NCBI GenBank assembly: GCA_965285935.1
Contig: OZ260667.1
Location: 52,204,001-52,268,000 of the forward strand
Origin: Ophelia neglecta
Lineage: Eukaryota
Reading direction: 5' to 3'
Length of the DNA: 64,000 nt
Below, piece by piece: positions 40,372-64,000 of this stretch. The position numbers and the translations under genes were made by a program. Each line of letters opens with the position of its first letter. Position 1 is the stretch's first letter. The notes below the pieces were generated by a model. It had not been told where the DNA came from. It saw only the letters and a program-made list of their open reading frames with translations, and made no database searches.

Positions 40372-40390
40372 CTTCCTGTTGAAATGAGTC
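33195..40390 (+). repeat. Paralogous copy of window positions 1-7190 (exons and introns)
   Basis: Position 1 aligns to 33195 (ttgtctcctttctgaattcccttagg...). The two are colinear to the stop codon with small indels. Confidence 0.97.
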
Positions 40391-42173: not shown

Positions 42174-42224
42174 TGTCGTTTGTTGCAGAGGTTTCACTTT
42201 AGAATGGTAATATATTTCATTATT

Positions 42225-42955
42225 ATCTATACGCTTCCAGACAACAAATGGAAGGCATGTGTGGATAAAAAAAACTATGACGCCTCCTTAAGCGCGTCTG
42301 TTGGAAGTCGCTTGTGCTACTCGGACGAAGTGGTATACTACTGACAGCCTTGGCTTTGGGTTTGACAAACCATTTCTCTGCTCTCTATCCGGTGTGGTGA
42401 TAATTGGTTAGATATTGGGGCTCCTTACTCCCTAACGTAAGATATGTAGTAGTATTGGGCTTAGTTGTTAGATGTTACACAATCGTTCTTATTTTTCACT
42501 ATAGTATCCATCTTTCAGGAATAGGGGACGTTTGGTGCAGAAAGTATTTGTTCCTAGTGTTTCCACCTTAAATTTTACATCACTCCAGAAAATGCAGGCA
42601 GGAAAGCCAATGTTGCAATCAGAATAGGGTTAAGCAAAATACATCAATGTTACTATACACTTTTTAGGAAAACCGTCTATAATGGATTTAGTGGTTGAAC
42701 TAGGCCTTATTAGATTTCGAAGTACTGCTTATGTAATTAGCAGTATAAACTAGAGGGAAATCTCTAACCTAAAACTATCTATTATTTTCATAAATTCAAG
42801 CATGTTCTTTATATAGTTGACTGCTAATGTCAATGCCGGTAAATTATATTGTTGCTTGGAAATTTGCCCTGCACGGTAAGTATAATAACTTCACCATTAT
42901 AATCACAGGAGTGATACCGAGATGTTGGAGGTCTTAGCTGCACCTGACACCTCAA
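42225..42955 (+). pseudogene. Decayed fragment of a further family paralogue (remnants of three consecutive exons)
   Basis: 42225-42437 aligns to exon 52377-52593/19606-19822 (acaacaaatgga...aactatgacgcctcc...gtctgttggaagtcg). 42520-42625 aligns to 20185-20290 (tttgttcctagtgtttcc...gccaatgttgcaa). 42800-42955 aligns to 20461-20610 (gcatgttct...aatgccggtaa...gatacc.agatgt). Many indels and stops. Confidence 0.8.
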
Positions 42956-44093: not shown

Positions 44094-44436
44094 ATGAAAG
44101 TGGCAAATATATTTGTGATTGCGACAATACTGTCTGTTATGGTTCCTGAAGCTTGTAGTTTCCTATGGAGACGGAGGAGGCGCGGAGGGTGCTCTGCAGT
44201 CAGCTGCCTCTGGGGCGGCTGGTCTGGATGGAGCCCATGTAATCACCCGTGTGGTACCTCGGGGACCCAAACCCGGAGTAGGGGCGTGTCTCGACAGCCT
44301 TCCTGTGGGGGAGCTGGCTGCAGTGGGCCCAGTTCAGAGACACGGGCGTGTAACAGATTCTGTAATAACGGAGGGGCACCCCGACCGGGATACTGTGATT
44401 GCCCAGGCGCCTTCTGGGGGACGTGTTGTGAAAAAC
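44094..44436 (+). CDS. Exon 1 of gene C: signal peptide, RRRRR, thrombospondin type-1 repeat and EGF-like motif
   Basis: MKVANIFVIATILSVMVPEACS|FLWRRRRRGGCSAVSCLWGGWSGWSPCNHPCGTSGTQTRSRGVSRQPSCGGAGCSGPSSETRACNRFCNNGG...CDCPGAFWGTCCEK contains the WxxWxxWxxC and RxR TSR signatures. Donor C|gtgagt is phase 1. Confidence 0.9.
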
Positions 44437-47400
44437 GTGAGTAACCTTAATGCGCTCTATATTTTATGAAAGCTTTGTTTTAGTAAAATACATTTATTCT
44501 AACATTACAGTAAAAACAACTTTGCCCATCACCTGTTACACCTCATAATACGCTCGGATCAAATGTCCATTATTAGTTTGCCATTCATTTGATAGTAAAC
44601 ATGTCAGCTTAATATTCATATATATTTATATACACATTTATGTGTGTATATCTGTGTGTGCGTGCGTGCGTGCATGCGTGCGTGTGTGTTTGCGTTCGTG
44701 CGTGTGTGTGGTTGTGGGCATATATCAAATCGTACTCACTAGATTATTATCGATCAGCTGTTTGAGCCATGCGTCTTTTTTGATCATCCTACACTCTATA
44801 CTTTTGCTTTGTCTGCCGGCTATTCACCCTTTGTCTGCCGGCTATTCACCCTTTGTCTGCAGGCTATTCACCCATTGTCTGCCGGCTATTCACCCTTTGT
44901 CTGCCGGCTATTCACCCTTTGTTTGCCGGCTATTCACCCTGGCATTTCCCCTGAAAACGTGAAAGTGGCACCATTTGTTAAGTTTTGAATGGATTAAAAT
45001 GACTAAAAGCTTCAAAAAAAAAGTCCGTTGCATAAAGAACGGCCTATATCTAATACTAAGTAGTGTTTGTTGCCATTTACCTGAAAAATTGCAAGATTGT
45101 ACCGAAATGAGGTTCATTGACCATTTTATATTGTTGATTGCCTATTAATGATAAATGCCTAGTCTACTACTGTCCCCACTTTTGAGATTACTCTCATTCT
45201 GATTGACAGCCAATGATTTCAACTGAAAATCCACCGATGTTTATGTTTCAAATAACCACTTAATATCAATATCTTATGTTTACGCTTGAGATAAGCATTA
45301 TTAAACACTGTTATGCTCAGTCAGAGAAACTTTAAATGTAATCACATTACCTACCTGTATGGTTTACGAGTTTGTGCAACAGTACTATGGACATTTTTTT
45401 TTGCAAAAAAACATATGTTGTCGAGAGTTTGAAATTTAATCTCATTTGCTTAGACTTGTATGAAATAGAATCATTCTGTGATCATAAATCTTATACGAAA
45501 TTATGTCCCATTTGTCAATTTTCTTCCAATTCGGTACTATTTGTTGACTGTTTCGACCACTTAAGAACCTATCATTCATAAATCTGTTGCGTTGTGTGAC
45601 ATATTTAGCTGTTTTCTTTTCCTATAATATTGCTTTATGCAACGTAACCAGCTGTTCACCACATTGCAGGTCAAGGCATGTCCGCTAATCGCTAATAAAG
45701 TATTAGATAATGTCGTTAGGTAATTTTTTTCCATTCCATTCAGTTCATTAATTTTATTTGGCATAATACGTGGTACATGTAACAGATGATTTTGTAAAAA
45801 GGATTGCATTGCCAAAGACGCCAGAGCTAGCTGATGAAGCTGTTGTTTCTGGACGCCCTGTAGCATGTTACAAAATTATTGTGCAAGCAAGAAATATAAG
45901 AGAAAAAAAAACTAAACAAATACAAAAATAAACACACCAGTCACTGTGCACATAGACAAAAGAAAAATTACAATATTACAAGTGATTAAGTATACGACAT
46001 GAAGTGTGGCAGATTTGTTGATTTGTTGGTAAAAGTTTTAAGGGTTCATCGTTTATAAACGTATCGACAACCAAATGATGTGGAAATGTACAATTCTCAT
46101 CATTAACTAAAGACCCAGTCTACGTAAAAGGGCAACGTACTGTATCCACATTTCTTTAATTCCTTGATACTTTTTATATCTAAACAAATCCGCCACTGAT
46201 TTATATATTCTCCAAAACCTCAATGAGTCTGGTGTCGTCGGGATGTTTCTATTCTTACGCACCTCTTTCCTTTTGGTTTTGATATATCTCAACTGGGAAA
46301 TAAATTACAGAAATCAAGAGCTTAATTAATGGCATTTCTATCTTTGAATAGCTTTAGTCTTTCATCTTTATTTACTACTCTAGCGCAGATTTCTTCGTTT
46401 GAATGTGAACCGCGAGGGAGTGAAATCAGGCAAAAGGTGTATATATAACTCTTATCTTGCGATGCATTTTATTTATGTTTAGATATGTTAAGATTGGTTT
46501 AAACATATTTATTTACAACGTGATTTTTACAATAGCAAATGCTAACAAAACGTAAGTATCACGTAAAAACAAGATTAATGATTATATTACAACTATAACA
46601 TGCGCCAACAAAATAAGAACAAATATTGCATGCACCGACAGGTGCGAAAAAGAATGGATGAAGGTTTGTATCTTAATTTAAGCATCTATTTTGTTTACAC
46701 AAATGCTGTGAAAATAATATGACAAACGAAGGAAAGATAAGTAAGAATATATGTATAAATGGCGAATCGATGAATGAAATGAGAAATGTAATGAAAATCA
46801 ATAATATGATTAAACAGTATATTAGTTGACAAAGCGACCAGAATTGCTGACGTAGACATCGATTAGATTTACAAACTCCGGCAAGGAGGTAAAAGCAGGC
46901 CCGTGGATAATTGTTTTAACATGATTATTGCTGGGTATGTAATGACGGTTGAAATATTCAAATAGTGGAAGCCGCAGGAGGGAATATTTTTCACAAAATA
47001 AAAAGAAGTGACTAATGCTTTCACTGACTGAACCGCATTGACCTGCAGGGGACGATATACAGTGGTTAAGATAAAGATGCTCATTTAACAAGAACAGCCC
47101 AGCCGGCACTGCGCTAAGAAAATTTGTGTAGGTCTCGAGCCCATATAAAAAACACGAAGGGAGGTCTCTGGATCGCGGAGTATATGCGTTTCTTATAAAT
47201 AGCTTTACTCTCACTTAGTCTGATGCAAAAGGGAAGTTTATTCCATTCAGAAATTACTAAGGGAAAGGAGGAGCTCATATAGTGATGGGTTCGACAACGA
47301 GGTGTGAGAACTATTAAGTTTGAAGCACTACAAGTAGACGCGAGGTCTGAGGCAAGGTTAGAAAGAACTTTTGGAGATACTGAGGTGAGTGGCCATGGTA

Positions 47401-50400
47401 TAATTATATCATAAAATTGACAGAGTAAGGCCCTACGCCGACGGGAGGCAAGAGTATTCCAACCTAATTCATCTAGAAGAAGATTATGAGAAGTTCCCTT
47501 CCTGGCTCCGGAAACAAAAGAAGCTGCTTCAATATTACGTTTCTCAAGCACGTTCGACATCTTTTGAGAACAACCATGGAAAAGGACAGAGCCGTATTCC
47601 AATATAGGTCTGACATAGGACATGTAAGCTGTGTCCAAAGATATGTTCTTTCCATTGCAAGTTGCTTGTGAGTGTAACATCCAAGTGACTCACATAATTA
47701 CAACTACCAATAACGTTATCACCTAAAAGAAGAGAAAAGTCGGGACCGGACCGAAGCTTCCTACTGAACAGAATATATTTAGTTTTGGGAATGCTTATAA
47801 TGACTTTCCAGCTTCTACACCAGGACTGAATAAGAGAGAGATCATCATTGAGCGTAGATACAGCAATATGTTTACGATCTGATTAAACCGGTACATTCAT
47901 GAAGTGTCGTCAGCAAAAAGGAAGGGCTTGGAGACCAGACCTTCAGTAATATCGTTTATATAGACCAGGGAAAGTAATGGTCCTAGAACCGAACCTTGCG
48001 GTACACCGGCAGAAAGGGCCTTATAGGAGGACGTGCCACCAGGAAGGGTGACACGTTGCCGTCTGTTTGTCAAATAATCAGTCAACCAGGATAGTGTCTG
48101 GCCATTAATGCCGTACTTGGAAAGTTTGTGCAGAAGCCCTTTATGCCAAACTTTCTCAAAGGCCTTGGTGGGATCAATGAAAACCCCTATGACCTCCTCA
48201 TTGGAGTCCAAGGCGTTCGCAATGTCCTCGCAGATATTAAATAATTGGTTTATGGTGGAATCACTAGGAATAAAACCAGACTGATTTGGGATTAAAATGC
48301 TATTATTTCTCAAGTGGTTATAGAGGTGTTGAAACATGATTTTTCAAAAACTTTGGACATGCAGGGAAGCAAGGAAATTGGACGGTAATTGTTACAGTCA
48401 TGTGCACTGTTCTTCTTATGTAATGGAATTACACTGGCACTCTTCCAAATAGTTGGGAATTTGCATTGAGTTAGTGAAGTGTTAAATAGAGAATCAAGTG
48501 GTCCAAAGAGTGCTGGTGCAGCCTCTCTCAAGAGAAAGTTACCTATTTGGTCTGGACCAGTGGCTTTATGGGACTTTAGATTTCTTAGAGTGTGAAAAAC
48601 ATCGGCAACAGTTATAATTTTATCTTCTATAGATGTGTTAAGATTGATGATGAAGCATTTGAAGAATATGTAAAATTATATGTTTAATCCGTTAAAATCA
48701 TGTTTATATTGTATTTTAGATTGCCTGCGTATATCTAACTGTGGGCAGCTCTATTGTACCTCTGGGAGTAACCAACGGTGTAAGAGATGTCACTATGACA
48801 AGGGAGGACAGATCAAAGCTTACATCCTTAAAAACTCAGGGCGCTACCCGAACAGGATCTGTCAACGTTAGTGACGAAGTGTATTAACAGTCCATAAGCC
48901 TGTTTCCTATTGTCCACAATTAGATAATATATAAACATCAAGGGTCTATTATATCACAATATTATATATCTTCAGAATACAGGACTGAATACACGACAGC
49001 TTTGCCATAATAAAGCGAAAACTATCCTACTTGTAAAATGTGTCTAGATTAAAGACTCAATTGATATGACACCCTTTATGCATGCCAATATTAACAGTAT
49101 ATCTCCTCTGGCTTATTCGTTAATTTTGTCTGGAATGAAGACAATGATGATATATTTGATGCTGTAAGTTATGTTATTCACTCATAGAGGTATGTTCCTG
49201 GCGCCCAGACAGTAAATACTGTTACCCAGGGTTGTGTCCGGAAGCCCCAAGGACGTGTAACTGTGCCCCAGGATACTCTGGAACCAACTGTATGACAAGT
49301 GAGTGAACACCGACAGCCTTGCAAAGCATACTTTTTAAAACTACTCTACAATTAAAAGGGTGCGAATATGCAATTTAAGGTGTCTTTTTATATTCGAAAC
49401 AGTTTATTCTATTTACTCTATTTTGATATCTGTTTACTGCAATAAGCCCGCTCTGCAAACATCATCATAAGCCTGGTGTGATGCACAAATGCACAATATA
49501 TTATATTCTTATGCGGACCCAAAGGGTTATAGTACAATACAAAAGTGCTGAACATTTATTTATGCTACTATTATCATTCTTTTATTAAAACCTCCACATA
49601 TATGAAGGAAAAAGTACATATAGTAACATCACAGACTAAACATACACAACTTTTCATACACCCGAGATGATCTATATTACTATAAATGTTCATATGTTAG
49701 AACATTTGTCAGAAAGTCGACAATTTCATTGTCCCCACAGGCGTAAACATGCCACCTCGGTTTAAGTGTGAAGAACAACCTGCATCGACAATTCTGTCTT
49801 CCAAGCTTCCAGAACATAGGGTCCTGATAACCACTCTGCAAGCATATAATTTAAAAGAGAATTAGCGGAAGAATTTACCATCGCAATTTGCCGTACTAAG
49901 TAGTGCATGTCCTGTCTAACGATGACTAGATGGAGTTTCTGAATCAAGTCAATGTGCTTTGTGCGAACGGTGAAGACTGAATTTGAGCCCGATGAAAAAG
50001 GTTAATTTGAAAGATGTGCCCGGCAGGTTAGGCTTATACTGCTCATGTCATAAAGCAGTGACGCTTGGCAAACAGCTCTCCAAAGATAGGCCTTCCCATG
50101 TTTGGTGTGAGACGCCAATCTCTCTCATTGCATAAAATGCCCGGCGGAATGCGGCACGACGGGTAACCATATGAGTGGGACAGTCCATAGAATAGTTCAC
50201 TACAAATAGGTTCAGAGTGTCCACATGTGAAACATCATCAGCAAATGATCTAAAAGGTAATTCTCCAATCTGAAAACCAGATTTTTCTGCTACTAATTCA
50301 AGTAAAAGGGCATTGATAAATAGGTAAAATAATTGAGAGGAAGTACACTGGCCAGCTTGGTTCCGCGTGAAACACAGAACGGACGATTTGTCCAGCATTT

Positions 50401-53400
50401 CCATCGGACAACAACTTCATATCAGATTACCATTCAAATAAACATCTCCGTTGTGTGGCTGATAACTCTCAATTTATTAAAATGACCAGCATGCTATATT
50501 GAATCGAAACATTTTTCAGCATCAAGTAAACAAATAAACAAATGTCACTTTTTCTCTTAAAAACACACTATAATTAAGAAATTTACACCTGGATGGCAGC
50601 CTGATTTTAATTAAGTATAGTGTTATTCTCCATAATGTTTGTCAACCGGTATTTCAAAACTGAAGGTAAATAATTTACCTACATATTAAGGAAGGGTTGT
50701 GGAGTGTTAAGCATTAGGGTCTGTTACGTATCTTTATTTTTATTTATTAGACAAGAACAAAACACCAACTAAAAGTGACTATACAAGCCTCGATGATACA
50801 ATTAAACGATGATACAAAGAGGACAATTCACATTTCTGTAACTATTAATCAGTTACAAAATCAATATCAATAGTTATTCCACTTTTTTAAAACATTGATA
50901 CATTTTTAAATTTTATCCAATGAAATTGGTTGAACTAACAAGATAAGATCGATGCCAGGATGGTCATGTTTTGAGCTAGAGATACCCTTGATATAAGTTC
51001 ATTTGTTTGTTCAGGACAACTAGAGCGAAAGCAATTGGCAGACAACACCTGGCTTAATGGATTCAACCCCTTGATATTTTTACTATTCATAATATTCCAA
51101 CAAAGTCTTGGTTTGGAGCACTCAGACAGAATTCTGATTTGATTTTAAAAAATACCGTTAAAATTTTACCCGATCCTGTATCTGATTTTCGCAAGGTTAA
51201 GATTTTACTGATAATGTATAATCTGTTTTCTCGTTTTTTTCGTTTTATGATAATTGCTTTTGGCTTGAATAACATTTGTCTTTTCTGTGACATGGGATCC
51301 GTACAGACCGGTATAGATCATTATAACGTTTGAGGTTCCCGTTAAAAAAATATTCCTCTTAATCAAACAACCCAAAATCATATATTGGCCTGTTTTAGAC
51401 AGGTGTTTGTAGTTATTGTTGTTCGCATATTTGATGAATACTTTACTTCCTGATCGTGTTTTGTATGCATTAGTAACTGCTTTCCCGGCGATAGCTAGCT
51501 GTTACGCAGGCGCCCAAGTGATAACAGGCGGAAAGATAAATGACTTTGTAGACGTTCCATGCGAGGGTTCGAATAATGTTGTCTACACAAATCTGAAAGT
51601 GACGCATTTCAAGGTCAGATTGTCATTTGCTCAATGCTAGTGTATATCATGTATTTAATGTTCTAAGCGTAGTGTCTTGGAGTAAGTCCATTGCTCTAAC
51701 AATTATTTAAACAAAACAATTGCAGGTAGACTGGAATACTCTATTTGAAGGACCACGTGCCTCAACGTACCCAAAGCCGTATTATGTAAATGATTTCAAA
51801 GTTGGAATTGTTTCTGCTGGAGTACGTATCGAGCACAAACGAGGTAAAGTGATGCATCGCTGTTTCAGTGTTAAAAACGACCATTCACACGTTTTGAACC
51901 GATTGTTATTGTACCGATATGATGGCAAAAAAAAACACTTCTATGGATTATGTGTGGCAAAGATATACAGTGAGAAATCCATGCAGCTGTTCTCTTTCAG
52001 GAGGTGTCGCCCAAAACAGCTTTGACATCGACTGCAACAATCGAAAGTCGCGAAACATACCAAATGCTGGTGTACACCATTGTGAAAAAACACAGGCAAT
52101 CCCGATTTCTTATAAACACGGAGACTCGTAAGATCAACTGATTTATTTTATGGTTTTTCATCATGGGTTTGATTAAAGTACCCGTGTCTTGCATAAAATA
52201 AATGCAGGTTGTAATAGTTACCATTTGAGTATATGCAAACTCTTAATATTTATGAAACGCAGATACCAATGCTTGCATCAAAACCAGGGGGTTCATGTGA
52301 AGAAAATAATGTAATAATCTCCAACATTCTACTTCGTTTAAATAAACAGTATGATGTGTATATTAGTTTTTTTCAGAGTATCAATACGCATACTGACAAC
52401 AAATGGAGGGTACGTTAGGATAAACAACTATGACGCCTCCGCCACGCCGTCTGTTGGAAGTCGGAAATACTACTCCGGGCGAAGTAACTCTACTAATAAC
52501 AGCCTTGTGTTTGACTTTGAGAGACCAGTCCACTGCTCTCAATCTGGATGTGGGAACAATTACTTAGATGTCGGGGATTCCTACTCAACAAATGTGAGTA
52601 TTGTGTCTGGTTTTGATTAAGGAAATGGTAAAAAAAACACATTCAATAAAAATTCGCCCACTCTGTAATCTTGTATCACTTCCTATTTTATATCAAAGTG
52701 AATACATATTGTTTGATGATAAAAGGTGTTATTTTCTTGTTAACAAACTGAACTGTGTTGCCACATTGATAAATATATGAAAGTGTGTGTATCATTCTCA
52801 CCTGCTATACTGGTTAACAATTATTACGTTGTTGGATCCAGGGAGAGTTGACAATCCGCTGGACAGGATGGTCTGACACTCCGTCTGGTATATTCAAGAC
52901 TGAGCTCCACATCTACAAGATGGTCCCATATGGCCAGGACCTTGGTTATAGGACACAAGCACCTCTTGTGCAGAAAATGTTTGTTCCTAGTGACTCAACT
53001 TTCCAATTCACCATTAATCCAGAAGACGGAGGTGGGTAGCCCAATGTTGTAATCAAAATTCCGTTTGATAATAACGTAATAGATAGAAACAATATATTTT
53101 ACTCTACACCAAGTGAAGACAAACATTCTCTTAAGGATCTAGTTTTTGTAGAATTCGACATGATACTCGCTTTTCAACTGATATTAATGTTGTCAGGTAT
53201 GTTCTGTATATTGTTGACTGTTGATGACAATGCCGGTAACTATGTTGCTGCGAGGAGATTTGTCCTGTATGATAATTATAGTAAAGTCACCATTGTGGAC
53301 AGAAGTGATACAAAAATGTGGGTTGACTCAGCTGCTGCTTACACCTCCTATGTTTGGGTCACCAATCTCCAGGACACCAACAATGTTGGGCCACAGGTTG

Positions 53401-56400
53401 GTCACGTGTCTGATATTCGCAATGTATCATTTAAGTAGAATTGTAAGTTATTCGGAAGTGTTATAGCATTGAACGATATTTGAAAAAATGATACGTTATT
53501 GTCTCACATAAAATCATTCATTAAATTATAAGGTTAATTTATGGTCCATTCAGGTAATGACAAAATGGCCCGGACACTTCATAAACCAATTCCATGTCGA
53601 TCATAAACTACTGAACGCCGTTGAGGCCCACAGTCCGGCGTCTGATATTGCCTACGAGGATATTCAAGGTCAGCCACCTCTTGTCAGGTCACGTGAGGCC
53701 ATAGTAAACATTAACGGGATGGTCAAGTACCAGGTGGGATACCGAGTTGACCGTAAAGGAGGAGAAACTACTGTTCAACCTCCATCAACGTGGATGGACG
53801 TGAATAAATTTATGGTGAATTACAATTATCTTTCTTTACTTCTATTTTTAAACACCCGTCTACTTTTTCTAGATGACTCTGTATTTCTGTTATGTATTAA
53901 CAGAAAGCCTTGTTTTATGAGTTGATTATAGAGTGTCATGCAAATTCTTACCAAGAGTATCGTTGGGTCGGACTCGCCGATTTATCGTTAACAATTGGCT
54001 ATGAATTTGTCCATGTTCCCAAAGCGACCCTGTGGGCTATGCTGGAGTTGTCTTTCCCTATCGAGTCTACCTAAGGATTACATCAATGAAAAGTTCCGAA
54101 AGTGCTGCACAGTTCAACTGTCGTGGTCAGGCGTTACCGTCGTCTATCGCCTACCTCCTTCAGCTAAGAAAAAAGTTGACCACCAACCAGAATTAAGATG
54201 AGGTTTCAGATATTTTACAAGATAAGGCCTTGAAGATAAGGGGTGATTTCAATTTCTACTTAACATTACCCTCAGCAAGTCTTAATAGACATGCCCTGCT
54301 AAGGATATGTCAGTTTTGAATTGCCCCAAAGTGCTTGGTATAGATCGCAACTTCGCTGCGCCTAGAAAATATCAGCATTTTTTGGAAATGCTGGATCGCC
54401 TATACGCCGTCAAATTGATGACTCTATGATAGACAACTCCAACCAGCTGTAACAGAAAACGTTAAAGTCGGAACAATTTCAAGGATCATCGATTCAAATT
54501 TAATAAGCTTTTACATAGGAAAAATGGTCCCTAATTTGCCTAGCCTTGAACCATCCCGTAAGATGGACAATTTTTTGATGTCAAAATCAAAATGATGATA
54601 CACGATGAGCTTCCAACAAGTGGTCATCTAGTTGTCTGCTCTCTCCTTGTGGCTATATCTGCGATCTGGCTAATTATCACAGTTGGATTTCTGAATAAAC
54701 TTAATCTGAACCCTTACAAGACTGACATTTTGGCGACGGACACAGGGTTGATATCCCATCTGCTCTTGTGGCTGGTCACACCATATCTGTGCGTAGTGCT
54801 CCTGTCGGCAATCCCGGGGTGCTGAATAGCGTAGCTCTTGCTCTCCTTGGGTACCTAGATCCCACCGGCAGGCACCAAATTAAAGACTTATGGTGACCGA
54901 GCGTTGTCACACTTGATCCAAAACTATGGAATACTTTGCCTGTTGGTCTGTTAGTGTTATTCACTTAAAACATTTCTATTTAAAGAAGCGTATAATGCAT
55001 GATATAAGTGTTTGCTTTAAACCACTAATGTTCTAGTCCGTTTTCTCTAAATGCTTAAATGCGTAATTTTGTTTTAAAGGGTAGGTGTATGTCCCTTATG
55101 ATTTCTTAAAAATAAGCTGATGTACTAGCCTTAGATAGGCTAGCTCTGATCTTGACTAGAGTGATTACTTTTGAGCCTAATGTATTATTGTTGTTTTAGG
55201 AATGTTTTCATTTGCTACCTAGAGCTTTTATCTATTATGAATCAAACCAAACGCATCTCACCTTACTTCCCAATGTATTCGATGGTGATTAAATAAAACG
55301 CATGAAAATCACTTTGTCCTCCTGCAAAAAGCGTGAACTTGAAGTGTCTCGTGTTGTCTAGATAATAACGTGTTTGAGGCAAAGGCGTTGGAAAAGTGAA
55401 CGATATCCGCACAACTGTTTTAAATGTGATGGAACACACGGCTACGCCAACATATTGTGAATTCTTGGATTGAAACTTCCGTTAGATTTATTTGAGTCTT
55501 GTCGATTCTCACCAAATTAATAATACACCATTCTAGTTGTGTTTTTGTCAATGCACGGTGGCACTGATAACTAAGGTACGGGCCAACCACCGATCCAAAA
55601 CTACCAAATGTTTTAAACTACTTAGCCACCTTTCACTGTAGTAAAGAACTGTTTGTTTTATGCTGGTGTACACCATTGTGAAAAAACTAAGGCAATCCCG
55701 ATTTCTTATAAACACGGAGACTCGTAAGATCAACTGATTTATTTTATGGTTTTTCATCATGGGTTTGATTAAAGTACCCGTGTCTTGCATAAAATAAATG
55801 CAGGTTGTAATAGTTACCATTTGAGTATATGCAAACTCTTAATATTTATGAAACGTAGATACCAATGCTTGCATCAAAACCAGGGGGTTCATGTGAAGAA
55901 AATAATGTAATAATCTCCAACATTCTACTTCGTTTAAATAAACAGTATGATGTGTATATTAGTTTTTTTCAGAGTATCAATACGCATACTGACAACAAAT
56001 GGAGGGTACGTTAGGATAAACAACTATGACGCCTCCGCCACGCCGTCTGTTGGAAGTCGGAAATACTACTCCGGGCGAAGTAACTCTACTAATAACAGCC
56101 TTGTGTTTGACTTTGAGAGACCAGTCCACTGCTCTCAATCTGGATGTGGGAACAATTACTTAGATGTCGGGGATTCCTACTCAACAAATGTGAGTATTGT
56201 GTCTGGTTTTGATTAAGGAAATGGTAAAAAAAACACATTCAATAAAAATTCGCCCACTCTGTAATCTTGTATCACTTCCTATTTTATATCAAAGTGAATA
56301 CATATTGTTTGATGATAAAAGGTGTTATTTTCTTGTTAACAAACTGAATTGTGTTGCCACATTGATAAATATATGAAAGTGTGTGTATCATTCTCACCTG

Positions 56401-59400
56401 CTATACTGGTTAACCATTATTACGTTGTTGGATCCAGGGAGAGTTGACAATCCGCTGGACAGGATGGTCTGACACTCCGTCTGGTATATTCAAGACTGAG
56501 CTCCACATCTACAAGATGGTCCCATATGGCCAGGACCTTGGTTATAGGACACAAGCACCTCTTGTGCAGAAAATGTTTGTTCCTAGTGACTCAACTTTCC
56601 AATTCACCATTAATCCAGAAGACAGAGGTGGGTAGCCCAATGTTGTAATCAAAATTCCGTTTGATAATAACGTAATAGATAGAAACAATATATTTTACTC
56701 TACACCAAGTGAAGACAAACATTCTCTTAAGGATCTAGTTTTTGTAGAATTCGACATGATACTCGCTTTTCAACTGATATTAATGTTGTCAGGTATGTTC
56801 TGTATATTGTTGACTGTTGATGACAATGCCGGTAACTATGTTGCTGCGAGGAGGTTTGTCCTGTATGATAATTATAGTAAAGTCACCATTGTGGACAGAA
56901 GTGATACAAAAATGTGGGTTGACTCAGCTGCTGCTAACACCTCCTATGTTTGAGTCACCAATCTCCAGGACACCAACAATGTTGGGCCACAGGTTGGTCA
57001 CGTGTCTGATATTCGCAATGTATCATTTAAGTAGAATTGTAAGTTATTCGGAAGTGTTATAGCATTGAACGATATTTGAAAAAATGATACGTTATTGTCT
57101 CACATAAAATCATTCATTAAATTATAAGGTTAATTTATGGTCCATTCAGGTAATGACAAAATGGCCCGGACACTTCATAAACCAATTCCATGTCGATCAT
57201 AAACTACTGAACGCCGTTGAGGCCCACAGTCCGGCGTCTGATATTGCCTACGAGGATATTCAAGGTCAGCCACCTCTTGTCAGGTCACGTGAGGCCATAG
57301 TAAACATTAACGGGATGGTCAAGTACCAGGTGGGATACCGAGTTGACCGTAAAGGAGGAGAAACTACTGTTCAACCTCCATCAACGTGGATGGACGTGAA
57401 TAAATTTATGGTGAATTACAATTATCTTTCTTTACTTCTATTTTTAAACACCCGTCTACTTTTTCTAGATGACTCTGTATTTCTGTTATGTATTAACAGA
57501 AAGCCTTGTTTTATGAGTTGATTATAGAGTGTCATGCAAATTCTTACCAAGAGTATCGTTGGGTCGGACTCGCCGATTTATCGTTAACAATTGGCTATGA
57601 ATTTGTCCATGTTCCCAAAGCGACCCTGTAGGCTATGCTGGAGTTGTCTTTCCCTATCGAGTCTACCTAAGGATTACATCAATGAAAAGTTCCGAAAGTG
57701 CTGCACAGTTCGACTGTCGTGGTCAGGCGTTACCGTCGTCTATCGCCTACCTCCTTCAGCTAAGAAAAAAGTTGACCACCAACCAGAATTAAGATGAGGT
57801 TTCAGATATTTTACAAGATAAGGCCTTGAAGATAAGGGGTGATTTCAATTTCTACTTAACATTACCCTCAGCAAGTCTTAATAGACATGCCCTGCTAAGG
57901 ATATGTCAGTTTTGAATTGCCCCAAAGTGCTTGGTATAGATCGCAACTTCGCTGCGCCTAGAAAATATCAGCATTTTTTGGAAATGCTGGATCGCCTATA
58001 CACCGTCAAATTGATGACTCTATGATAGACAACTCCAACCAGCTGTAACAGAAAACGTTAAAGTCGGAACAATTTCAAGGATCATCGATTCAAATTTAAT
58101 AAGCTTTTACATAGGAAAAATGGTCCCTAATTTGCCTAGCCTTGTACCATCCCGTAAGATGGACAATTTTTTTATGTCAAAATCAAAATGATGATACACG
58201 ATGAGCTTCCAACAAGTGGTCATCTAGTTGTCTGCTCTTGTGGCTATATCTGCCATCTGGCTAATTATCACAGTTGGATTTCTGAATAAACTAAATCTGA
58301 ACCCTTACAAGACTGACATTTTGGCGACGGACACAGGGTTGATATCCCATCTGTTCTTGTGGCTGGTCACACCATATCTGTGCGTAGTGCTCCTGTCGGC
58401 AATCCCGGGGCAATATTATATCCTGCCATGTCCAAGCTATAGCAGGTCACTAGTGTTACGAAAATTGTTAGCAGCCATTTGAAAGCTATAAGCCTTGCTT
58501 GTAGCTATTTAACTGGTGAATCAGCAAAGCAGGCGGGTGTCTCATTGGTCCTAGCAAGATTAGCTTATTGTAACGGGCTTTTGTGTAGTCTGCCATAGTA
58601 CCATTAGCAAGACGACAGAGGGTGCTGAATAGCGTAGCTCTTGTTCTCCTTGGGTACCTAGATCCCACCGGCAGGCACCAAATTAAAACCTTATGGTGAC
58701 CGAGCGTTGTCACACTTGATCCAAAACTATGAAATACTTTGCCTGTTGGTCTGTTAGTGTTCTTCACTTAAAACATTTCTATTTAAAGAAGCGTATAATG
58801 CATGATATAAGTGTTTGCTTTAAACCACTAATGTTCTAGTTCGTTTTCTCTAAATGCTTAAATGCGTAATTTTGTTTTAAAGGGTAGGTGTATGTCCCTT
58901 ATGATTTCTTAAAACTAAGCTGATGTACTAGCCTTAGATAGGCTAGCTCTGATCTTGACTAGAGTGATTACTTTTGAGCCTAATGTATTATTGTTGTTTT
59001 AGGAATGTTTTCATTTGCTCTATAAAATAAATATTATATTTGAACTCTCATTACCAGTTCTGAAATGGCAACAATCCTTCTGAAGTAAATTGTTTGTTTG
59101 ATAATATGCTTTCTTTGAGACACCGTAGGACGAAGAAGTATCAATGGATATACCTAGAACAGACGGAGACTCAGTACGTATCTTTATCAAGGGCTATGAC
59201 GTCATGAACAAAACGATAACGGATGACGTGTTAATACACGTGGACTCCTCACCACCAATCATAGAGAACGTTTGGCTGAGTAGACACGGACAAAGGTAGC
59301 TAAAATTCCATCACTCAATTTACTAATTCAATATGATGAACGAAACCTTCAAATCATAATATATATATATCCTACCTCGATTTTAATACATATATACTAC

Positions 59401-62206
59401 TATGACTTCTGGCTCCCAAATAGAACCCATAGACCCTCTGTTCAGTGATGACGGTGACTCTATCAGTGCTATTGAACCAACCTTTTTTGGAGCTGGGGAT
59501 GTAGCACACTGGATAGAGTCCCTGGTATCGCTGGGCAAGGTGAATGGTACCGCAAGGGTGGTGGGTTCGAGTCCCATCCAAGTCAGAACAACATTTGAAG
59601 TGTCAAAACACTCCAAAAATTTAAATTGTCGCATGGATTTCCGCAGTAAGTTTAAAAAGACCTATATGACCCAGCCTATAATGAGAAAATATATCCTGCC
59701 TCGATATATATATATATATATCCAGTTTTGCTCAAATATTATTAATGGGCACTTTGTTTCGGAAATAAATTCATCAACTGGTCGCACAAACATATTTGAA
59801 TTTAATCATAAGTCGGGTATATCATTAAGTTTTCTATTTCCTTTAATATCTTTCTTTGAAAATCCTATAAACCAATGACCCCCCCCCCCTCGCCCCTTAT
59901 TTTTCAGATTGGAAGTTGATATCATCGACCATCACTCAGGCATACAGCACGTCAAATGGGAGATGTACCACACCTCAGATCCCATCCTTGTTCATTTAGT
60001 AGGAACGGCAGATGTAGGTGTATTTTTTAATGTAAATAGGTTTTGTATTTGTAAATCTCCTGCTTTATTGTGTAAAATAAACACCTTTCTATATTTAGTT
60101 TGTTTTTTTGCTTTACGATTATATCCTTATGCTTTCTAAAATATAATGATTCTTACAGGTTAAAACCTGCAAACTACCAGACAAGGGATGTTATTGTATA
60201 CCCAAGGGAGAGTGTTTTCTGAAAAGGTTTACTTTATCGCCGACTGCAAAGGAATTGGAAGTTTCAAATGGGCATACCGTCTCTCTAATAACTGCAACAA
60301 ATTTTGCATTGCTACAGGCTGTCTATATCTACCAGGTTATAATTTTAATGCTGTTAGTTATGAAGTGAAGACATACAATTAACTATGCAGTATGTACGCA
60401 CGGCATTAGTTTCATGGTTTGTTCATTGGAACCTATCAAAAAGCACATTAACATGTATTACTATAGTTGAAGTCCAAACCCAAATTTACGCTCGACGCAT
60501 CAGTTCAGACACAATAATAATTTCTGTATTTTATTATACACTAATAGGGCATCTTAGATACAAGTCCCCCCTCAACGGGTATTGTTCATATCAACTCTTC
60601 TGTGTCTGATGATTTGGGAAATACGACTGTGTTAGCTTCATGGGAACAGTTCTTTGATGAGCAAAGTGGTGTTATTTTTTACCAATATGGGTTCTCTGAC
60701 AAATGTTTGACATCCAGTGCTTTCGCGGTGCCAGCACCAATGGGAGTAGGTGAATTTTTAGCATATAGTAAAAACAAGTCTAGCGTAACATTTACAATGA
60801 TCATCAGTTCAAAATCTACAACCATAAAGTTAATTAAATAACAAGTATAATTATATTGAATTAGAACACTTTCGCTATTATTTTGAATACTAACATTTAG
60901 TATAATACTTTTTTGTTTAGATCTATCAAACTAATAACACATTTGTAAACTACACTCTCACCGGATCTCAACCATTTTATCTGACATTGGTTGCCTACAA
61001 TGGTGCACTTGAGCCGTCAATCCCGGTGTGTTCCAGCGTGATTCCTAAACACTCGCTAGGTTTGTATATCCTAGTACATATTTAAGAGCTCATTGTTTAA
61101 ACGGTTGAAATCGTTTCTTGATTTTATCAATGTAATTGATGGGCTGAATCGTTGGTTTGGAATCACAATGGTGAAATGTTCTTGTTAAAAGTGTTTAAAC
61201 AAGCTGAATTTGATGAAGCATGTATTAGTTAATTCTTAATGTAATATGCGCGAATGTACTATCCTAAGCACAGATTTGTTTATTTGCAACAGATAAACTG
61301 TCAACGGGGGCATTCGTTGGAATTGGCATTTCCGTTGCTATTTTGATCATATTCACCATTATTGGCTTAATAGCTCTGTGCTTAAGGTAATATCTTGTTT
61401 CATTTGCTTGAATATATCGAAAAAAATGCATTGTGTACGTGAACTGATTGGGGTAAACAATCAAGTGAGGCCTACATTTTTTAGATACTCTTACTAACTA
61501 TCGCAAGGTATTCTATGAAACCTATCCAACACCTGACATGGGAACAAGGAGGTGTTTGAATGGATAGGTCCAATCCCATAAACATTTAAGTATAATATGG
61601 CATAGTATTTGTGGATTGGACACAGGAACACATCTGGAGTATAACGTAACCAAGTTTCTATCAATCTATTGACACTACAATAAATGAGCTCGAACAATGA
61701 TGTCTAGGATAAATCAAATGGCCATTAAGATATTTTTACCACGTATAAATATAAAATTAAGGTACAATAAAAAGGGATCATATGATAACACTGCAATGAT
61801 AATTAAATATGCTAAAACTGCATAATAATGTACAATTTATAAATGCCCACTTGTTATTGTATTGTTTAAGAATGCTATTCACAGATGCCGGAGTGCTCCA
61901 GCCGAACCCCCGCCTGTGTCTACTGTCAACCCGGCTTACGAGAACAGTAGTGTCCAACCTGATTTGAATGAACTGGACGAGACCTTGTATGAAACTATAT
62001 CGCCTGAAGCAGACAATTCACACGTATACGACACTATGCATCAAGGAAATTTTGCTCCGACCGTTTCAAAAGTGTCCCCAATTTATGAAAACATGGAAAG
62101 TCCAGCTCGACCTGTGAGGCAACATCTGTTTGGTCACATGACCACCAAGCGTATAATTGTTAGACACGGGCATGGTAGAGGTCATGATAATTGTCTTCCT
62201 TATTGA
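44094..62206 (+). CDS. Paralogue C: single-pass type I membrane protein of about 1,020 aa (SP - TSP1 - EGF-like - Cys-rich - shared scaffold - TM - Tyr-motif tail); may be compromised by an internal duplication
   Basis: Exons 44094-44436, 48720-48866, 49188-49298, 51474-51613, 51726-51843, 52001-52127, 52377-52593, 52842-53031, 53197-53396, 53554-53814, 59129-59295, 59908-60031, 60159-60335, 60548-60745, 60921-61059, 61293-61386 and 61885-62206. All phases match and the lengths sum to 3075 nt, a multiple of 3. The model requires skipping the duplicated exons in 55660-57410. Confidence 0.65.
44641..44710. repeat. (GT)n/(GCGT)n microsatellite
   Basis: tgtgtgtgcgtgcgtgcgtgcatgcgtgcgtgtgtgt... 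Confidence 0.85.
44808..44939. repeat. Minisatellite, six copies of a 22-bp unit
   Basis: Unit tttgtctgccggctattcaccc, six near-perfect head-to-tail copies with no spacers. Confidence 0.95.
46820..48640 (-). mobile_element. 5'-truncated, frameshifted CR1/L2-like LINE (RT to 3' end), antisense in intron 1 of gene C
   Basis: KATGPD..., WKSASVIPLHKK...NYRPISLLPCMSKVFE, NQSGFIPSDST.NQL, AFEKVWHKGLL.KL, GVPQGSVLGPLL, LFADDT, YVRPILEYGS and WNKLP are spread over several frames. Confidence 0.95.
48720..48866 (+). CDS. Cys-rich exon 2 of gene C (absent from gene B)
   Basis: HCLRISNCGQLYCTSGSNQRCKRCHYDKGGQIKAYILKNSGRYPNRICQ has six Cys, a tttag acceptor and a C|gttagt donor. Phase 1-1. Confidence 0.75.
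49700..50720 (-). mobile_element. Highly degraded non-LTR retrotransposon RT fragment
   Basis: Minus strand reads FICLLDAEKCFDSI*H, then LFYLFINALLLEL...GFQIG...FADDV. Confidence 0.7.
52064..55216 (+). repeat. Copy 1 of a recent internal duplication in gene C (intact exons)
   Basis: Near-identical to 55660-59019, with initial offset 3596. Starts mid-exon at atgctggtgtacaccattgtg and ends at aatgttttcatttgct. Confidence 0.95.
54040..55000 (+). mobile_element. Internally deleted L2-like LINE remnant in an intron (duplicated at about 57640-58800)
   Basis: Endonuclease-like VVYRLPPSAKK and GDFNF; KLNLNPYKTD (compare LKLNxxKTE); 3' end TYGDRA...PKLWNTLP...LKTFLFKEAY. Confidence 0.7.
55660..59019 (+). 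pseudogene. Copy 2 of the internal duplication: half an exon plus four exons, one carrying a nonsense codon
   Basis: Lacks the acceptor of the first exon. TGG has become TGA at 56951-56953. Retains about 210 bp (58411-58620) that is missing from copy 1. Confidence 0.85.
57640..58800 (+). mobile_element. L2-like LINE remnant, second copy
   Basis: Same motifs as 54040-55000, plus YCNGLLCSLP and RVLNSVA (compare DYCNSLLxGLP and LQRVQNxAAR). Confidence 0.7.
59492..59585 (+). mobile_element. tRNA-derived SINE head or tRNA pseudogene
   Basis: ggggatgTAGCACACTGG (A box) ... gtgGGTTCGAGTCCcat (B box and T-arm). The acceptor stem does not pair, so this is not a functional tRNA. Confidence 0.6.
61293..61386 (+). 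CDS. Transmembrane exon of gene C
   Basis: caacag|AT AAA CTG... translates as DKLSTGAFVGIGISVAILIIFTIIGLIALCLR, about 25 uncharged hydrophobic residues followed by a basic residue. Phase 1 in, phase 2 out (AG|gtaata). Not present in the ORF track. Confidence 0.85.
61885..62206 (+). CDS. Cytoplasmic-tail exon of gene C with four tyrosine motifs
   Basis: Phase-2 acceptor ttcacag|A TGC CGG matches the TM exon. Reads RCRSAPAEPPPVSTVNPAYENSS...ETLYETISPEADNSHVYDTM...SPIYENMESP. An AATAAA lies at about 62515. Confidence 0.8.
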
Positions 62207-64000
62207 ATCCGAACAGGGTATACGCAACCTATATTTTTAAAACTAGACAATGAATGTTTGTTAAAGCCAAGCACTGTGTACAGATAAACAGATGTTTAGG
62301 TAACACTGTTCTCGCAATTCTGGGAAAGATTAAATCTTGATTGTTAAAACCGATCTAGTTATACAGGATACGCCACTAACACTTACTGTAAAAGGGATAC
62401 ATGTTAGAGTTTATTAATATCTCTGGTTTGTAAAATGGTTAAATTAAAAGCGAAAATATGGAATGCATCCCGTGTTCCAGCCGATAGTTTTTCACAATCG
62501 TGAGATATAAATACAATAAACTAGATACATAAAATAAAATCCATTGTAATTTCTTGCAACGAATGTTATCTTAACTCAACTAACCAATGACACACGTTTT
62601 GGGTTAATACGAATATAAAGGGTTGAAATAACCCCGAAAATTTATAAATATGGTATGGTGCAAAACGGTCATTTTCCAAAGGGTATGCAAGCGAAAACGA
62701 AATTATATAAAGATAAGACATTTTGTCATTTTAAAGATGTTTCCTGGTTCAACCATTATATTTGGATAGTTATCGTACTATGAAAAAGGGCAGAGTCGAG
62801 GAAAAGTGAAATTCATATCTATGCAAGATTGGTCCCCCCCGGTCAATAAAACTCACAAAACTGTGCATATTCATATTGTAAGACTATTTTCAGACCAGAT
62901 GTGTATATCGATTGTGTAATATGGTTTCGACACCGGCAAGCAATGATACGATTTAGATTTTCTAACCATAGAGTGGCAATAGAAATACACATGGCTACTG
63001 TCTCGAAGGATAATGTTCTTTTAAATTTTTTGATAAAAAAGAAAGTAAACAATATTATCGCAATAACTGCTTACATTTAAACTTTCTTTCTGACGCACGA
63101 AGTATATAACAATTAAGTGTAGATTATTCTCCCAATTATTTTATTTGTAACCCTAGAATAATTTATTAATATTTTCGTTTATACATGTATATGTTAGATA
63201 GCACGTATACCCTGTTTATTTTAGAGCTTTTACTATATGCCGGCGGCCTCATGTATTTAGCCCAATGAAATTAGAAAGATTGGACTGACATATTAGCTTG
63301 GCTATCCAGTATTATAATGCAAAAAAATTATTTCTTACCTTAGATCATATGAATTACCCAATAAAGCAATTATATAAACCGTTATTTTGGCAATTACATA
63401 AATTCTTGATTCGTTAAACTATAGATTTGTCAGTTGTTCACACAGTGAACAAAGCATTTCCAGTTGCCATAGCCAGCGTTCATTTCTATTCGAATGATTA
63501 GTAAATAAATGTTTCGTTAAACAAATGTAAGAGATCGGGAAGTTGGCGCCGACATGCTAACACCATCTCAAATTTCCAGCCTTGGCTTAACATCACTGGT
63601 TGCCATAAAGTTTTTAGAAAACGGTAAATGAGAAGTAATATTTTAAGGGAGGAATATTATATGAACAGGATGACAATTACACGTCAGCTTAAAAATAAAA
63701 CCGCCAAACAATTTCAAACCTACCCTATCTTTGATGTGATTTAAAATCTATTGGATGATTCCCGTCTTGTACACACCATTAATACTCCAATGACATTCAA
63801 ACAGTAGCACATTGTTACAGGTTACTACAAAATCAGGTTATGCTTGTTTCCCAAAAGCGTAATAAGTAGTATTGTCATGCTAAAGTTTCCACAGCGCTAA
63901 TTTCCCAACTGTGACTATTGCCGATGACGACACATCTTTATCGAACGCTGCGTTAGGCTAAACTATATGATCAATAACCCATTGATAGACGAAGAGTCAA

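What the first reader, a model, noticed from the sequence alone, without database searches (positions are those of the whole stretch)
60921..62206. Hidden TM exon and phosphotyrosine-motif tail turn a truncated scaffold into a receptor
In B the exon continues ...AYNAALEPSVAVCSDGVTIDTTPP... into more than 2,000 further residues. In C homology stops at AYNGALEPSIPVCS, and a phase-1 donor leads to a TM exon missing from the ORF track, then in phase 2 to a low-complexity tail. The tail carries NPAY (NPxY, the PTB-binding/endocytosis consensus) overlapping YENS (YxN, Grb2-type SH2), TLYETI (exact ITSM consensus TxYxxI/V), VYDTM (YxxM, PI3K p85-type) and IYENM (dual YxNM, as in CD28 YMNM). YETI-x9-YDTM has ITAM-like spacing. 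No catalytic domain is visible, so signalling through kinase or adaptor recruitment is inferred.
Basis: partly seen in the sequence, partly recalled or inferred. Interest (0 to 1): 0.85.

Follow-up and report, generated by a model that had tools for sequence, protein, structure and literature searches.

The report
Membrane anchor and tyrosine tail exons
Two small exons probably give the short last gene of a cluster of giant secreted animal proteins a membrane anchor and a tyrosine-motif tail, making a likely surface receptor, but there is no RNA evidence, no relative of the tail was found, and the assembled copy may be freshly broken.

Summary
E15 (60921-61059), a 31-codon membrane-span exon (61293-61386) and a 107-codon tail exon (61885-62206) have AG/GT borders and matching phases. 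Joined in a script to 14 upstream exons from an ATG/signal-peptide/TSP1 exon at 44094, they give an unbroken 1018-codon type I membrane protein.

Evidence that the exons are real:
- The span is the most hydrophobic 21-mer in 204 kb, all six frames.
- The tail is a GC island.
- Four of its five tyrosines sit in [AVLI]-Y-[DE]-[NT], written with different codons (0 of 200,000 shuffles).
- Gene C shows purifying selection (dN/dS about 0.18). Its homology to the four ~33-kb paralogues stops inside E15.

Evidence against, or missing:
- No RNA run exists.
- The ITAM claim fails.
- A 3.6-kb internal duplication (over 99% identical) adds 868 nt (3n+1), and its copy of exon 9 carries TGA. The full protein needs that copy skipped.

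Verdict: probably a real lineage-specific receptor-like gene. Signalling is inferred, and the allele may be newly inactivated. A new member of a known kind; modest interest.

The parts
44094..44436 (+). Exon 1 of gene C: ATG, signal peptide (MKVANIFVIATILSVMVPEACS), TSP1 repeat and an EGF-like Cys-rich end. The donor AAC|GTGAGT leaves 1 base.
   Evidence: Sequence. Pfam TSP_1 at E 5.7e-8 (33.3 bits, cut-off 21.6). Paralogous first exons (81-83% identical) lie upstream of gene 1.
48720..53814 (+). Exons 2-10 of gene C: 48720-48866, 49188-49298, 51474-51613, 51726-51843, 52001-52127, 52377-52593, 52842-53031, 53197-53396 and 53554-53814. All have AG/GT borders and consecutive matching phases.
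   Evidence: Homology to the four giant paralogues. Splice sites are conserved in alignments with gene 1 and B. The in-script join has no stop.
55660..59019 (+). Second copy of a tandem duplication of 52064-55216 (99.2% over 2756 nt, 98.3% over the last 400 nt). It holds a 64-nt piece of exon 6 and exons 7'-10' (55973-56189, 56438-56627, 56793-56992, 57150-57410). Exon 9' has TGA at 56951-56953 where copy 1 has TGG.
   Evidence: The four duplicated exons sum to 868 nt (3n+1). Including them gives a stop at codon 632. Short-read contigs did not show the A of the TGA.
59129..60745 (+). Exons 11-14 of gene C: 59129-59295, 59908-60013, 60159-60335 and 60548-60745. They are strongly diverged from the giants (43-61% amino-acid identity) but open and in phase.
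   Evidence: For exons 12-15, dN is 0.35-0.37 with dS saturated.
60921..61059 (+). Exon 15, the finding's first exon. It encodes the end of the last beta-sandwich repeat (…LVAYNGALEPSIPVCS), then 22 nt with no homology to the giants, then the donor TAG|GTTTGT, which leaves 1 base.
61293..61386 (+). Membrane-span exon: (D)KLST-GAFVGIGISVAILIIFTIIGLIALCL-(R). It leaves 2 bases before the donor AAG|GTAATA. An R-C-R stop-transfer sequence follows on the cytoplasmic side.
   Evidence: It is single copy in the genome.
61885..62206 (+). Tail exon of 107 codons including the split Arg, ending in TGA at 62204-62206. It carries NPAYENS, TLYETI, VYDTM and IYENM. Its last 35 residues are basic and His-rich and score poorly as coding.
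62515..62538 (+). Two AATAAA hexamers (62515 and 62533) about 310 nt after the stop. They are candidate polyadenylation signals.
   Evidence: This is inference only.

Best explanation
60921-62206 is the true 3' end of gene C. C is an old, short, membrane-anchored paralogue of a tandem family of four ~33-kb genes for giant secreted multidomain glycoproteins.

The 17-exon model (44094-62206) encodes a 1018-residue type I protein:
- a signal peptide, a TSP1 repeat and EGF-like modules;
- about 700 residues of family-specific beta-sandwich-type modules;
- a 10-residue stalk and one membrane span;
- a 107-residue tail that is probably disordered.

The tail has no enzyme domain. It carries four tyrosines in a shared [AVLI]-Y-[DE]-[NT] context.

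Inferred mechanism: after ligand binding or clustering, Src-type kinases phosphorylate these tyrosines. The phosphotyrosines then recruit SH2/PTB adaptors: Grb2/Drk at YxN, p85 at YxxM, and PTB or endocytic adaptors at NPxY. This is how non-catalytic tyrosine-phosphorylated receptors work.

Shown: the exon structure, the open frame, the topology signals, the motif regularity and purifying selection on C.

Inferred: splicing, expression, phosphorylation and partners.

The assembled allele also carries a very recent internal duplication. That copy must be skipped for the protein to be made.
For: - Exons, splice sites and phases.
- The in-script join of 17 exons gives 3057 nt and 1018 codons with no stop, ending in the tail.
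- Only two hydrophobic peaks exist, the signal peptide (6-24) and the span (886-911).
- The span is the most hydrophobic 21-mer in 204 kb across six frames.
- Tail GC is 0.463 against flanks of 0.31-0.33, reached by 1.8% of non-exonic windows.
- Four tyrosines share [AVLI]Y[DE][NT] with different codons (TAC/TAT, GAG/GAA/GAC), in 0 of 200,000 shuffles.
- dN/dS of C against the giants is 0.18-0.20. The C branch has dN 0.137 and dS 0.79. Exons 12-15 stay open although dS is saturated.
- Homology to the giants ends inside exon 15, and after it the frame runs into a stop within 15 codons.
- The genome encodes at least 67 SH2 exon matches.
Against: - No RNA run holds the locus. The three holders are DNA contigs from one sample.
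- Span and tail have no paralogue in the genome.
- Among 1.84 billion protein representatives the only hit is a spurious plant LRR match. The Atlas and PDB also give nothing.
- Including duplicated exons 7'-10' shifts the frame (stop at codon 632), and exon 9' reads TGA.
- Variants seen in exons 11-14 are 7 non-synonymous to 4 synonymous, close to neutral.
- The last 41 codons of the tail score like non-coding sequence.
- The codon-usage score did not separate coding from non-coding ORFs here.
Confidence: 0.55

Rival explanations
1. Gene C is now a pseudogene, or a null allele in this haplotype. The membrane-span and tail exons were once its 3' end. The recent 3.6-kb internal duplication, and possibly the TGA in exon 9', now stop translation after about 630-840 codons. 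No membrane receptor is made from this allele.
For: - The duplicated exons sum to 868 nt (3n+1), and the splice sites of both copies are identical. Stops fall at codon 632, 840 or 518 depending on which exons are included.
- Exon 9' reads TGA against TGG in copy 1.
- At least three sequence versions occur at 56617/56624 and at 56936/56953 in one sample, which points to a real duplication rather than an assembly artefact.
- Variants in exons 11-14 run 7 non-synonymous to 4 synonymous.
Against: - The long-term dN/dS is 0.18, so any inactivation is very recent. The two copies differ at 14 of 2579 sites.
- Skipping copy 2 restores a perfect 1018-codon frame.
- The A of the TGA was not seen in the contigs of two runs, and a third run had no contig there.
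- All three runs come from one sample, so nothing is known about other alleles.
Confidence: 0.2
2. The membrane-span and tail exons are used mainly in a much shorter transcript. The signal-peptide/TSP1/EGF exon, alone or with exons 2-3, would splice directly to the span exon. That gives a 252- or 338-residue membrane protein, and the giant-family exons would be skipped or decaying passengers in its intron.
For: - Exon 1 leaves 1 base and the span exon needs 1 base.
- The joins exon 1 to span, and exons 1-3 to span, both give open frames that end in the tail.
- Exons 2 and 3 are symmetric, phase 1 on both sides.
Against: - Exons 4-15 of C have kept open frames, splice sites and a dN/dS near 0.18 over a long divergence. 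That is not expected of passengers.
- No small gene with this layout was seen at the paralogous first exons upstream or at C12:53.28 Mb.
Confidence: 0.1
3. The exons are real, but the tyrosine motifs serve sorting and endocytosis (NPxY and YxxPhi bound by PTB adaptors and AP-2), not phosphotyrosine signalling.
For: NPAY is present, and there are three YxxPhi matches: YETI, YDTM and YENM. From general knowledge, NPxY and YxxPhi are classical internalisation signals that work without phosphorylation.
Against: An acidic residue at +1 and N/T at +2 on all four tyrosines is not required for AP-2 binding. It resembles kinase-substrate and SH2 contexts instead (inference from known motif preferences).
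Confidence: 0.1
4. The span and tail are chance open frames in non-coding DNA. Gene C ends by read-through after exon 15 (…KHSLGLYILVHI, stop at 61083-61085) as a short secreted protein.
For: - The tail ORF of about 114-125 codons is not by itself beyond chance in a 64-kb AT-rich window. This is my own rough estimate of about 1-2 expected.
- The tail has no homologue anywhere.
- The codon score is inconclusive.
Against: Several features coincide within 1.2 kb, on the right strand, directly after the homology breakpoint:
- the top hydrophobic segment of 204 kb;
- compatible phases at two junctions;
- canonical splice sites;
- a GC island;
- a basic stop-transfer sequence;
- the regular tyrosine context.

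No AATAAA or ATTAAA lies between 61060 and 61678.
Confidence: 0.05

Closest known systems
Non-catalytic tyrosine-phosphorylated receptors with YxNM-type tails (DAP10 YINM, CD28 YMNM; the ITT-like motif)
   Same: Both are single-pass proteins with a short tail and no enzyme domain. IYENM matches YxNM, which combines a Grb2-type YxN with a p85-type YxxM. The motif definition is as cited in PMC12582321 and from general knowledge.
   Different: There is no sequence homology. The ectodomain is about 885 residues of TSP1/EGF and family-specific modules, not an Ig domain or a short adaptor stub. The tail has four motif tyrosines. Function is untested.
CED-1 / Draper / MEGF10 engulfment receptors
   Same: Both are type I proteins with an EGF-containing ectodomain. 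Both have a tail that combines NPxY (bound by the PTB adaptor CED-6/GULP) with further YxxI/L-type tyrosines.
   Different: Draper has a true ITAM; here the ITAM consensus is not met. The ectodomain lacks EMI and multiple EGF repeats. No homology was detected.
SLAM-family and other ITSM receptors (TxYxxV/I)
   Same: TLYETI matches the ITSM consensus exactly.
   Different: There is only one copy of the motif and no Ig ectodomain. SAP/EAT-2-type adaptors were not examined in this genome.
Invertebrate multigene receptor families with tyrosine-motif tails (for example the Botryllus FcoR family, PMC12582321, and other receptor families noted in this genome by the scan)
   Same: All are lineage-specific type I receptors, in tandem clusters that evolve quickly and vary in copy number, with short tyrosine-motif tails encoded on small 3' exons.
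   Different: Here only one gene of the cluster has a tail. The others are secreted giants. The tail has no paralogue, and neither ITIM nor hemITAM is present.
The neighbouring giant paralogues (gene 1, gene 2, A and B of the 33-kb tandem array)
   Same: Exons 2-15 of C are homologous to them (43-93% amino-acid identity), with the same exon borders and phases. The first exon of C matches that of gene 1.
   Different: The giants' equivalent of exon 15 runs on into further repeats for about 17 kb more. For A and B the gene is seen to end …TTYSKS/…IYTTS, then stop; the 3' ends of gene 1 and gene 2 were not examined. No membrane span was found on the + strand of the window, which holds B whole and the 3' end of A. 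C stops 38 codons into that exon and carries the span and tail instead.

Membership tests
Type I single-pass membrane protein | An N-terminal cleavable signal peptide plus exactly one further hydrophobic span, with basic residues on the cytoplasmic side | tested here: met
   A Kyte-Doolittle scan of the in-script model finds only residues 6-24 (2.10) and 893-911 (3.05). R-C-R follows the span. No dedicated predictor such as DeepTMHMM was available.
ITAM-bearing receptors | Yxx[LI]-x(6-12)-Yxx[LI] | tested here: not met
   The regex finds no match. The candidate YETI-x9-YDTM has M at +3 of the second tyrosine.
ITSM receptors | TxYxx[VI] in the cytoplasmic tail | tested here: met
   TLYETI at tail residues 33-38. 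This is a motif match only and does not test function.
ITIM receptors | [SIVL]xYxx[IVL] | tested here: not met
   No match.
NPxY / PTB-binding receptors (LDLR, CED-1 class) | NPxY in the cytoplasmic tail | tested here: met
   NPAY at tail residues 15-18, which is 17 residues after the span.
YxNM (ITT-like; DAP10/CD28 class) | YxNM in the tail | tested here: met
   YENM at tail residues 67-70.
Any of the above as a functional signalling receptor | Tyrosines are phosphorylated and bind SH2/PTB partners; motifs are conserved in orthologues | not testable with these tools
   No RNA or protein data exist. No orthologue or paralogue of the tail was found. The genome does encode at least 67 SH2 exon matches.
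Expressed, spliced gene | Junction reads 61059^61293 and 61386^61885 | not testable with these tools
   The look-up of sequencing runs returned only DNA-type contig sets from one sample.
Thrombospondin type 1 repeat proteins | Pfam TSP_1 above the gathering score | tested here: met
   Exon 1 scores 33.3 bits against a cut-off of 21.6, E 5.7e-8.
Fibronectin type III repeat proteins (for the repeat ending in exon 15) | Pfam fn3 match or an FN3 fold | tested here: inconclusive
No Pfam hit on single exons. The Atlas's best lead is a mollusc cluster with fn3, at 0.89. The W..F.D..SG[IV]..Y and AYN.A..PS pattern looks FN3-like by eye.

The most novel reading that the evidence does not exclude
The membrane span and tyrosine tail have no relative anywhere. 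They may have arisen from non-coding DNA at the breakpoint of an old truncation. That event would have turned the N-terminal ~880 residues of a giant secreted matrix protein into a surface receptor. Because the receptor shares its whole ectodomain with the matrix giants next door, it could sense or compete for the same ligands. This would be a matched secreted/membrane pair generated within one tandem array.
Probability: 0.12. Interest if true: 0.6.

Novelty: new member of a known kind. Interest (0 to 1): 0.33.

Why it matters
If the splice is real, this is a clean genomic example of a lineage making a new non-catalytic, tyrosine-motif receptor. It would have done so by cutting a giant secreted adhesion-type gene short and adding two small exons. 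The secreted parents still sit next to it for comparison. That would give experimenters a tractable pair, same ectodomain with and without a signalling tail, in a poorly studied invertebrate. It would also add to the picture that such tails arise repeatedly outside vertebrate immunity. If it is not expressed, it is one more decaying duplicate in a fast-evolving tandem array.

Tried and rejected
- RNA evidence: the look-up of sequencing runs gave no RNA run. The contigs are DNA from one sample.
- Homologues of the tail: HMMER against 1.84 billion representatives gave only a spurious repeat match to a plant LRR protein. The Atlas gave 0.82, which is chance level. The PDB gave nothing.
- Control for database coverage: exon 10, which is 84% conserved among the paralogues, found no candidate of 50-155 residues.
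- Own-genome searches for tail, span and DNA 61040-63400 returned only the query itself.
- A codon-usage log-odds score trained on 26 kb of paralogue-supported exons did not separate coding from non-coding ORFs. The tail scored 0.09, coding segments averaged 0.13 and non-coding ORFs 0.08. I set it aside as inconclusive.
- Pfam on single exons found only TSP_1 and VWA.
- I looked for a membrane span at the 3' ends of the giants A and B and found none on the + strand of the window.
- I looked for small TSP1-to-span genes at the paralogous first exons and found none.
- ARAGORN found no tRNA in the high-copy repeat of intron 11.
- The joined 17-exon protein was built only inside a script, to count frames and hydropathy.
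Full report
**What the window is**

The window is G000:C12:52204001-52268000 of a 762-Mb animal genome. It is AT-rich, about 35-41% GC. Rfam found nothing. Earlier notes of the scan guess an annelid; I did not test that.

**The observation**

All three pieces are in the sequence as described.
- Exon 15 of my numbering starts at 60921 (TTTAG|ATC). It reads I-YQTNNTFVNYTLTGSQPFYLTLVAYNGALEPSIPVCSSVIPKHSL and ends at 61059 before TAG|GTTTGT, leaving one base.
- The next exon, 61293-61386 (CAACAG|AT…AAG|GTAATA), supplies two bases. It reads (D)KLSTGAFVGIGISVAILIIFTIIGLIALCL(R) and leaves two bases.
- The last exon starts at 61885 (TCACAG|A) and reads CRSAPAEPPPVSTVNPAYENSS…DNCLPY, with TGA at 62204-62206.
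The ITAM consensus is not met.
- A weaker second in-frame pair also exists: donor AGC|GTGATT after 61037 with acceptor GCACAG|ATT at 61274.

**The surroundings**

Self-comparison of the window, and then of 204 kb around it, shows a tandem array of units about 33 kb long. Homologous head exons lie at window-relative -82084 (gene 1), -48824 (gene 2), -15474 (gene A), 17526 (gene B) and 48674 (gene C).
- Window 1-7187 is the 3' end of A. It is 87-95% identical at the DNA level to 33195-40391, the 3' end of B.
- A and B end …TTIYTTS/…TTYSKS followed by a stop. No hydrophobic span lies on the + strand of the window apart from the one in the finding. I did not examine the 3' ends of gene 1 and gene 2.
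- B has VWA exons at its head (Pfam VWA, E 1e-18).
- Gene 1 and gene C instead start with an exon for ATG, signal peptide, TSP1 repeat and an EGF-like end. In C this is 44094-44436 (Pfam TSP_1 33.3 bits, donor AAC|GTGAGT).
- Most of the remaining ectodomain has no Pfam family. By eye the repeats have an FN3-like signature (W..F.D..SG[IV]..Y … AYN.A..PS … D.[ST]PP).

**Gene model of C**

I placed 15 upstream exons using the paralogue alignments and the conserved AG/GT sites. Every junction has matching phases.

I joined them inside a script only. From ATG 44094 to TGA 62206, the 17 exons give 3057 nt, or 1018 codons, with no stop. Hydropathy shows just two peaks: the signal peptide (6-24) and the span (886-911, KD 3.05). 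There are 885 residues outside the membrane, with 38 Cys and 8 N-glycosylation sequons, and 107 residues inside.

**Are the two small exons real?**

Intrinsic evidence is strong.
1. The span is the single most hydrophobic 21-mer in all six frames of 204 kb. Only 14 segments exceed 2.4.
2. It lies within the 825 nt between exon 15 and the tail ORF, on the right strand. It has canonical sites and the two phases needed.
3. The tail exon has GC 0.463 (0.49 in its first 196 nt). The introns beside it are at 0.31-0.32 and the 3' flank at 0.33, like the other exons of C (0.39-0.57 against 0.23-0.39). Only 1.8% of non-exonic 322-nt windows reach that value.
4. Four of the five tail tyrosines sit in [AVLI]-Y-[DE]-[NT]: AYEN, LYET, VYDT and IYEN. 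They are written with different codons, so this is not a recent DNA repeat. None of 200,000 shuffles of the tail reached four such sites. I chose the pattern after seeing it, so the figure overstates significance, but not by five orders of magnitude.
5. R-C-R follows the span, and AATAAA hexamers lie about 310 nt after the stop.

A codon-usage score was inconclusive. The last 41 codons, which are basic and His-rich, look less like coding sequence than the first 65.

**Is gene C a living gene?**

Pairwise Nei-Gojobori estimates on 734 aligned codons give dN/dS of 0.18-0.20 between C and each giant. In the three-taxon split, the branch leading to C has dN 0.137 and dS 0.79.
- The tree is unrooted, so part of that branch belongs to the giants' stem. 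Even so, a copy dead from birth should have pushed the ratio well above that of the other branches (0.2-0.25), and it does not.
- Exons 12-15 are the most diverged (dN 0.35-0.37, dS saturated), yet they are open, in phase and keep the family motifs.
- C is therefore old and was long constrained. Homology with the giants stops at about 61037, inside an exon that in the giants runs on. After that point C's frame closes within 15 codons. Such a gene needs a 3' end, and the span and tail exons are the only candidate in sight.

**What speaks against a working receptor today**

- A tandem duplication (52064-55216 against 55660-59019) is 99.2% identical over its first 2756 nt and 98.3% over its last 400 nt, with 14 substitutions in 2579 aligned nt. 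It repeats exons 7-10 and the last 64 nt of exon 6.
- The four exons sum to 868 nt (3n+1), and both copies have the same splice sites. Outcomes, all:
  - plain inclusion shifts the frame, with a stop at codon 632;
  - use of a cryptic acceptor in the exon 6 remnant restores the frame, but exon 9' reads TGA where copy 1 reads TGG, with a stop at codon 840;
  - only skipping the whole second copy gives the full protein.
- Contigs of three DNA runs from one sample did not show the A of that TGA. Two runs show G there and the third has no contig. One contig combines a copy-2 letter at 56936 with G at 56953. The nonsense change may therefore be heterozygous or an assembly error.
- Three distinct versions at two site pairs argue that the duplication itself is real.
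- In single-copy exons 11-14 the same contigs show 7 non-synonymous and 4 synonymous differences. That is near the neutral ratio, but the numbers are small.

**Conservation**

The tail, the span exon and the DNA of 61040-63400 occur once in the genome. HMMER of the tail against 1.84 billion representatives found only a plant LRR protein whose repeats contain DEYENLPSP, which is a false positive. The Atlas and PDB gave nothing.

A control query with a well-conserved ectodomain exon also found nothing among short proteins, so the databases may simply lack this lineage.

**Mechanism**

The most likely reading is a non-catalytic, tyrosine-phosphorylated type I receptor.
- The acidic +1 and N/T +2 context suits Src-type kinases.
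- It creates YxN (Grb2/Drk class) twice, YxxM (p85 class) twice, one YxNM (the DAP10/CD28-type motif, PMC12582321), one ITSM and one NPxY.
- The genome has at least 67 SH2 exon matches.
- None of this was tested. A sorting or endocytosis role for NPxY and YxxPhi is a fair alternative.

**Comparison and novelty**

It works like DAP10/CD28-type and Draper/CED-1-type tails and like other invertebrate tyrosine-motif receptors. It is homologous to none of them, and it is not an ITAM receptor. It is a new member of a known kind. The unusual feature is that its ectodomain is shared with four neighbouring secreted giants, while its span and tail are orphans.

The joined spliced protein was not sent to any search, fold or complex tool.

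Noticed in passing
G000:C12:52106633-52116000 (L015, L017), about 90-100 kb upstream of the window: There are three intact tandem copies (81-83% identical to window 44094-44436) of the ATG/signal-peptide/TSP1/EGF first exon, 3-6 kb apart, plus degenerate ones. All lie ahead of gene 1's second exon. They may be alternative first exons or promoters.
   Followed up: partly
window 1-7187 vs 33195-40391; heads at -82084, -48824, -15474 and 17526 (window-relative): Four giant paralogues sit in a 33-kb tandem array with a mosaic history. Genes 2, A and B differ by dS 0.04-0.07. Gene 1 against B has dS about 1.7-2.0 in exons 2-6 but 0.1-0.24 in exons 7-15. This suggests gene conversion or recombination between units.
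   Followed up: partly
window 42224-42953: A decayed fragment (68-76% DNA identity) of family exons 7-9 lies between the end of B and the first exon of C. It looks like a remnant of another partial copy.
   Followed up: no
window 47114-48531, minus strand: ORFs with reverse-transcriptase motifs (…YINDI…FADD…) sit inside the first intron of gene C. This is probably a non-LTR retrotransposon fragment.
   Followed up: no
window 59296-59907 (intron 11 of C), especially 59300-59499: An insertion is absent from the paralogues, contains GGTTCGAGTCCC-like sequence, and shows very high summed contig depth (1000-1900 against about 20-40 nearby). It is a high-copy repeat, perhaps a tRNA-derived SINE. ARAGORN finds no tRNA.
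   Followed up: partly
window 55217-55659 and L019 about 528-976 (window-relative 64528-64976): The joint between the two copies of the internal duplication carries about 440 nt that resemble a sequence 3.4 kb downstream of the tail exon (70-89% at the protein level). A repeat element may have mediated the duplication.
   Followed up: no
window 44807-44940 and 44654-44710: A 22-nt minisatellite (6.1 copies, 95% matches) and a GTGC-type microsatellite lie just after exon 1 of C. They create long spurious ORFs.
   Followed up: yes
window about 10600-10700 (open frame 10459-10773): A possible signal-peptide exon for gene B (MGYSAGIKFSSGLVLAVAILSYARAEG) lies upstream of its VWA exons at 16164-17117. 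This would make B a separate gene rather than a continuation of A.
   Followed up: no
window 62114: A strong-looking donor, CCT|GTGAGG (phase 0), lies inside the tail ORF just after the last tyrosine motif. The 31 codons after it score poorly as coding. The tail exon might be internal in some transcripts, but no downstream exon was found within 2 kb.
   Followed up: partly
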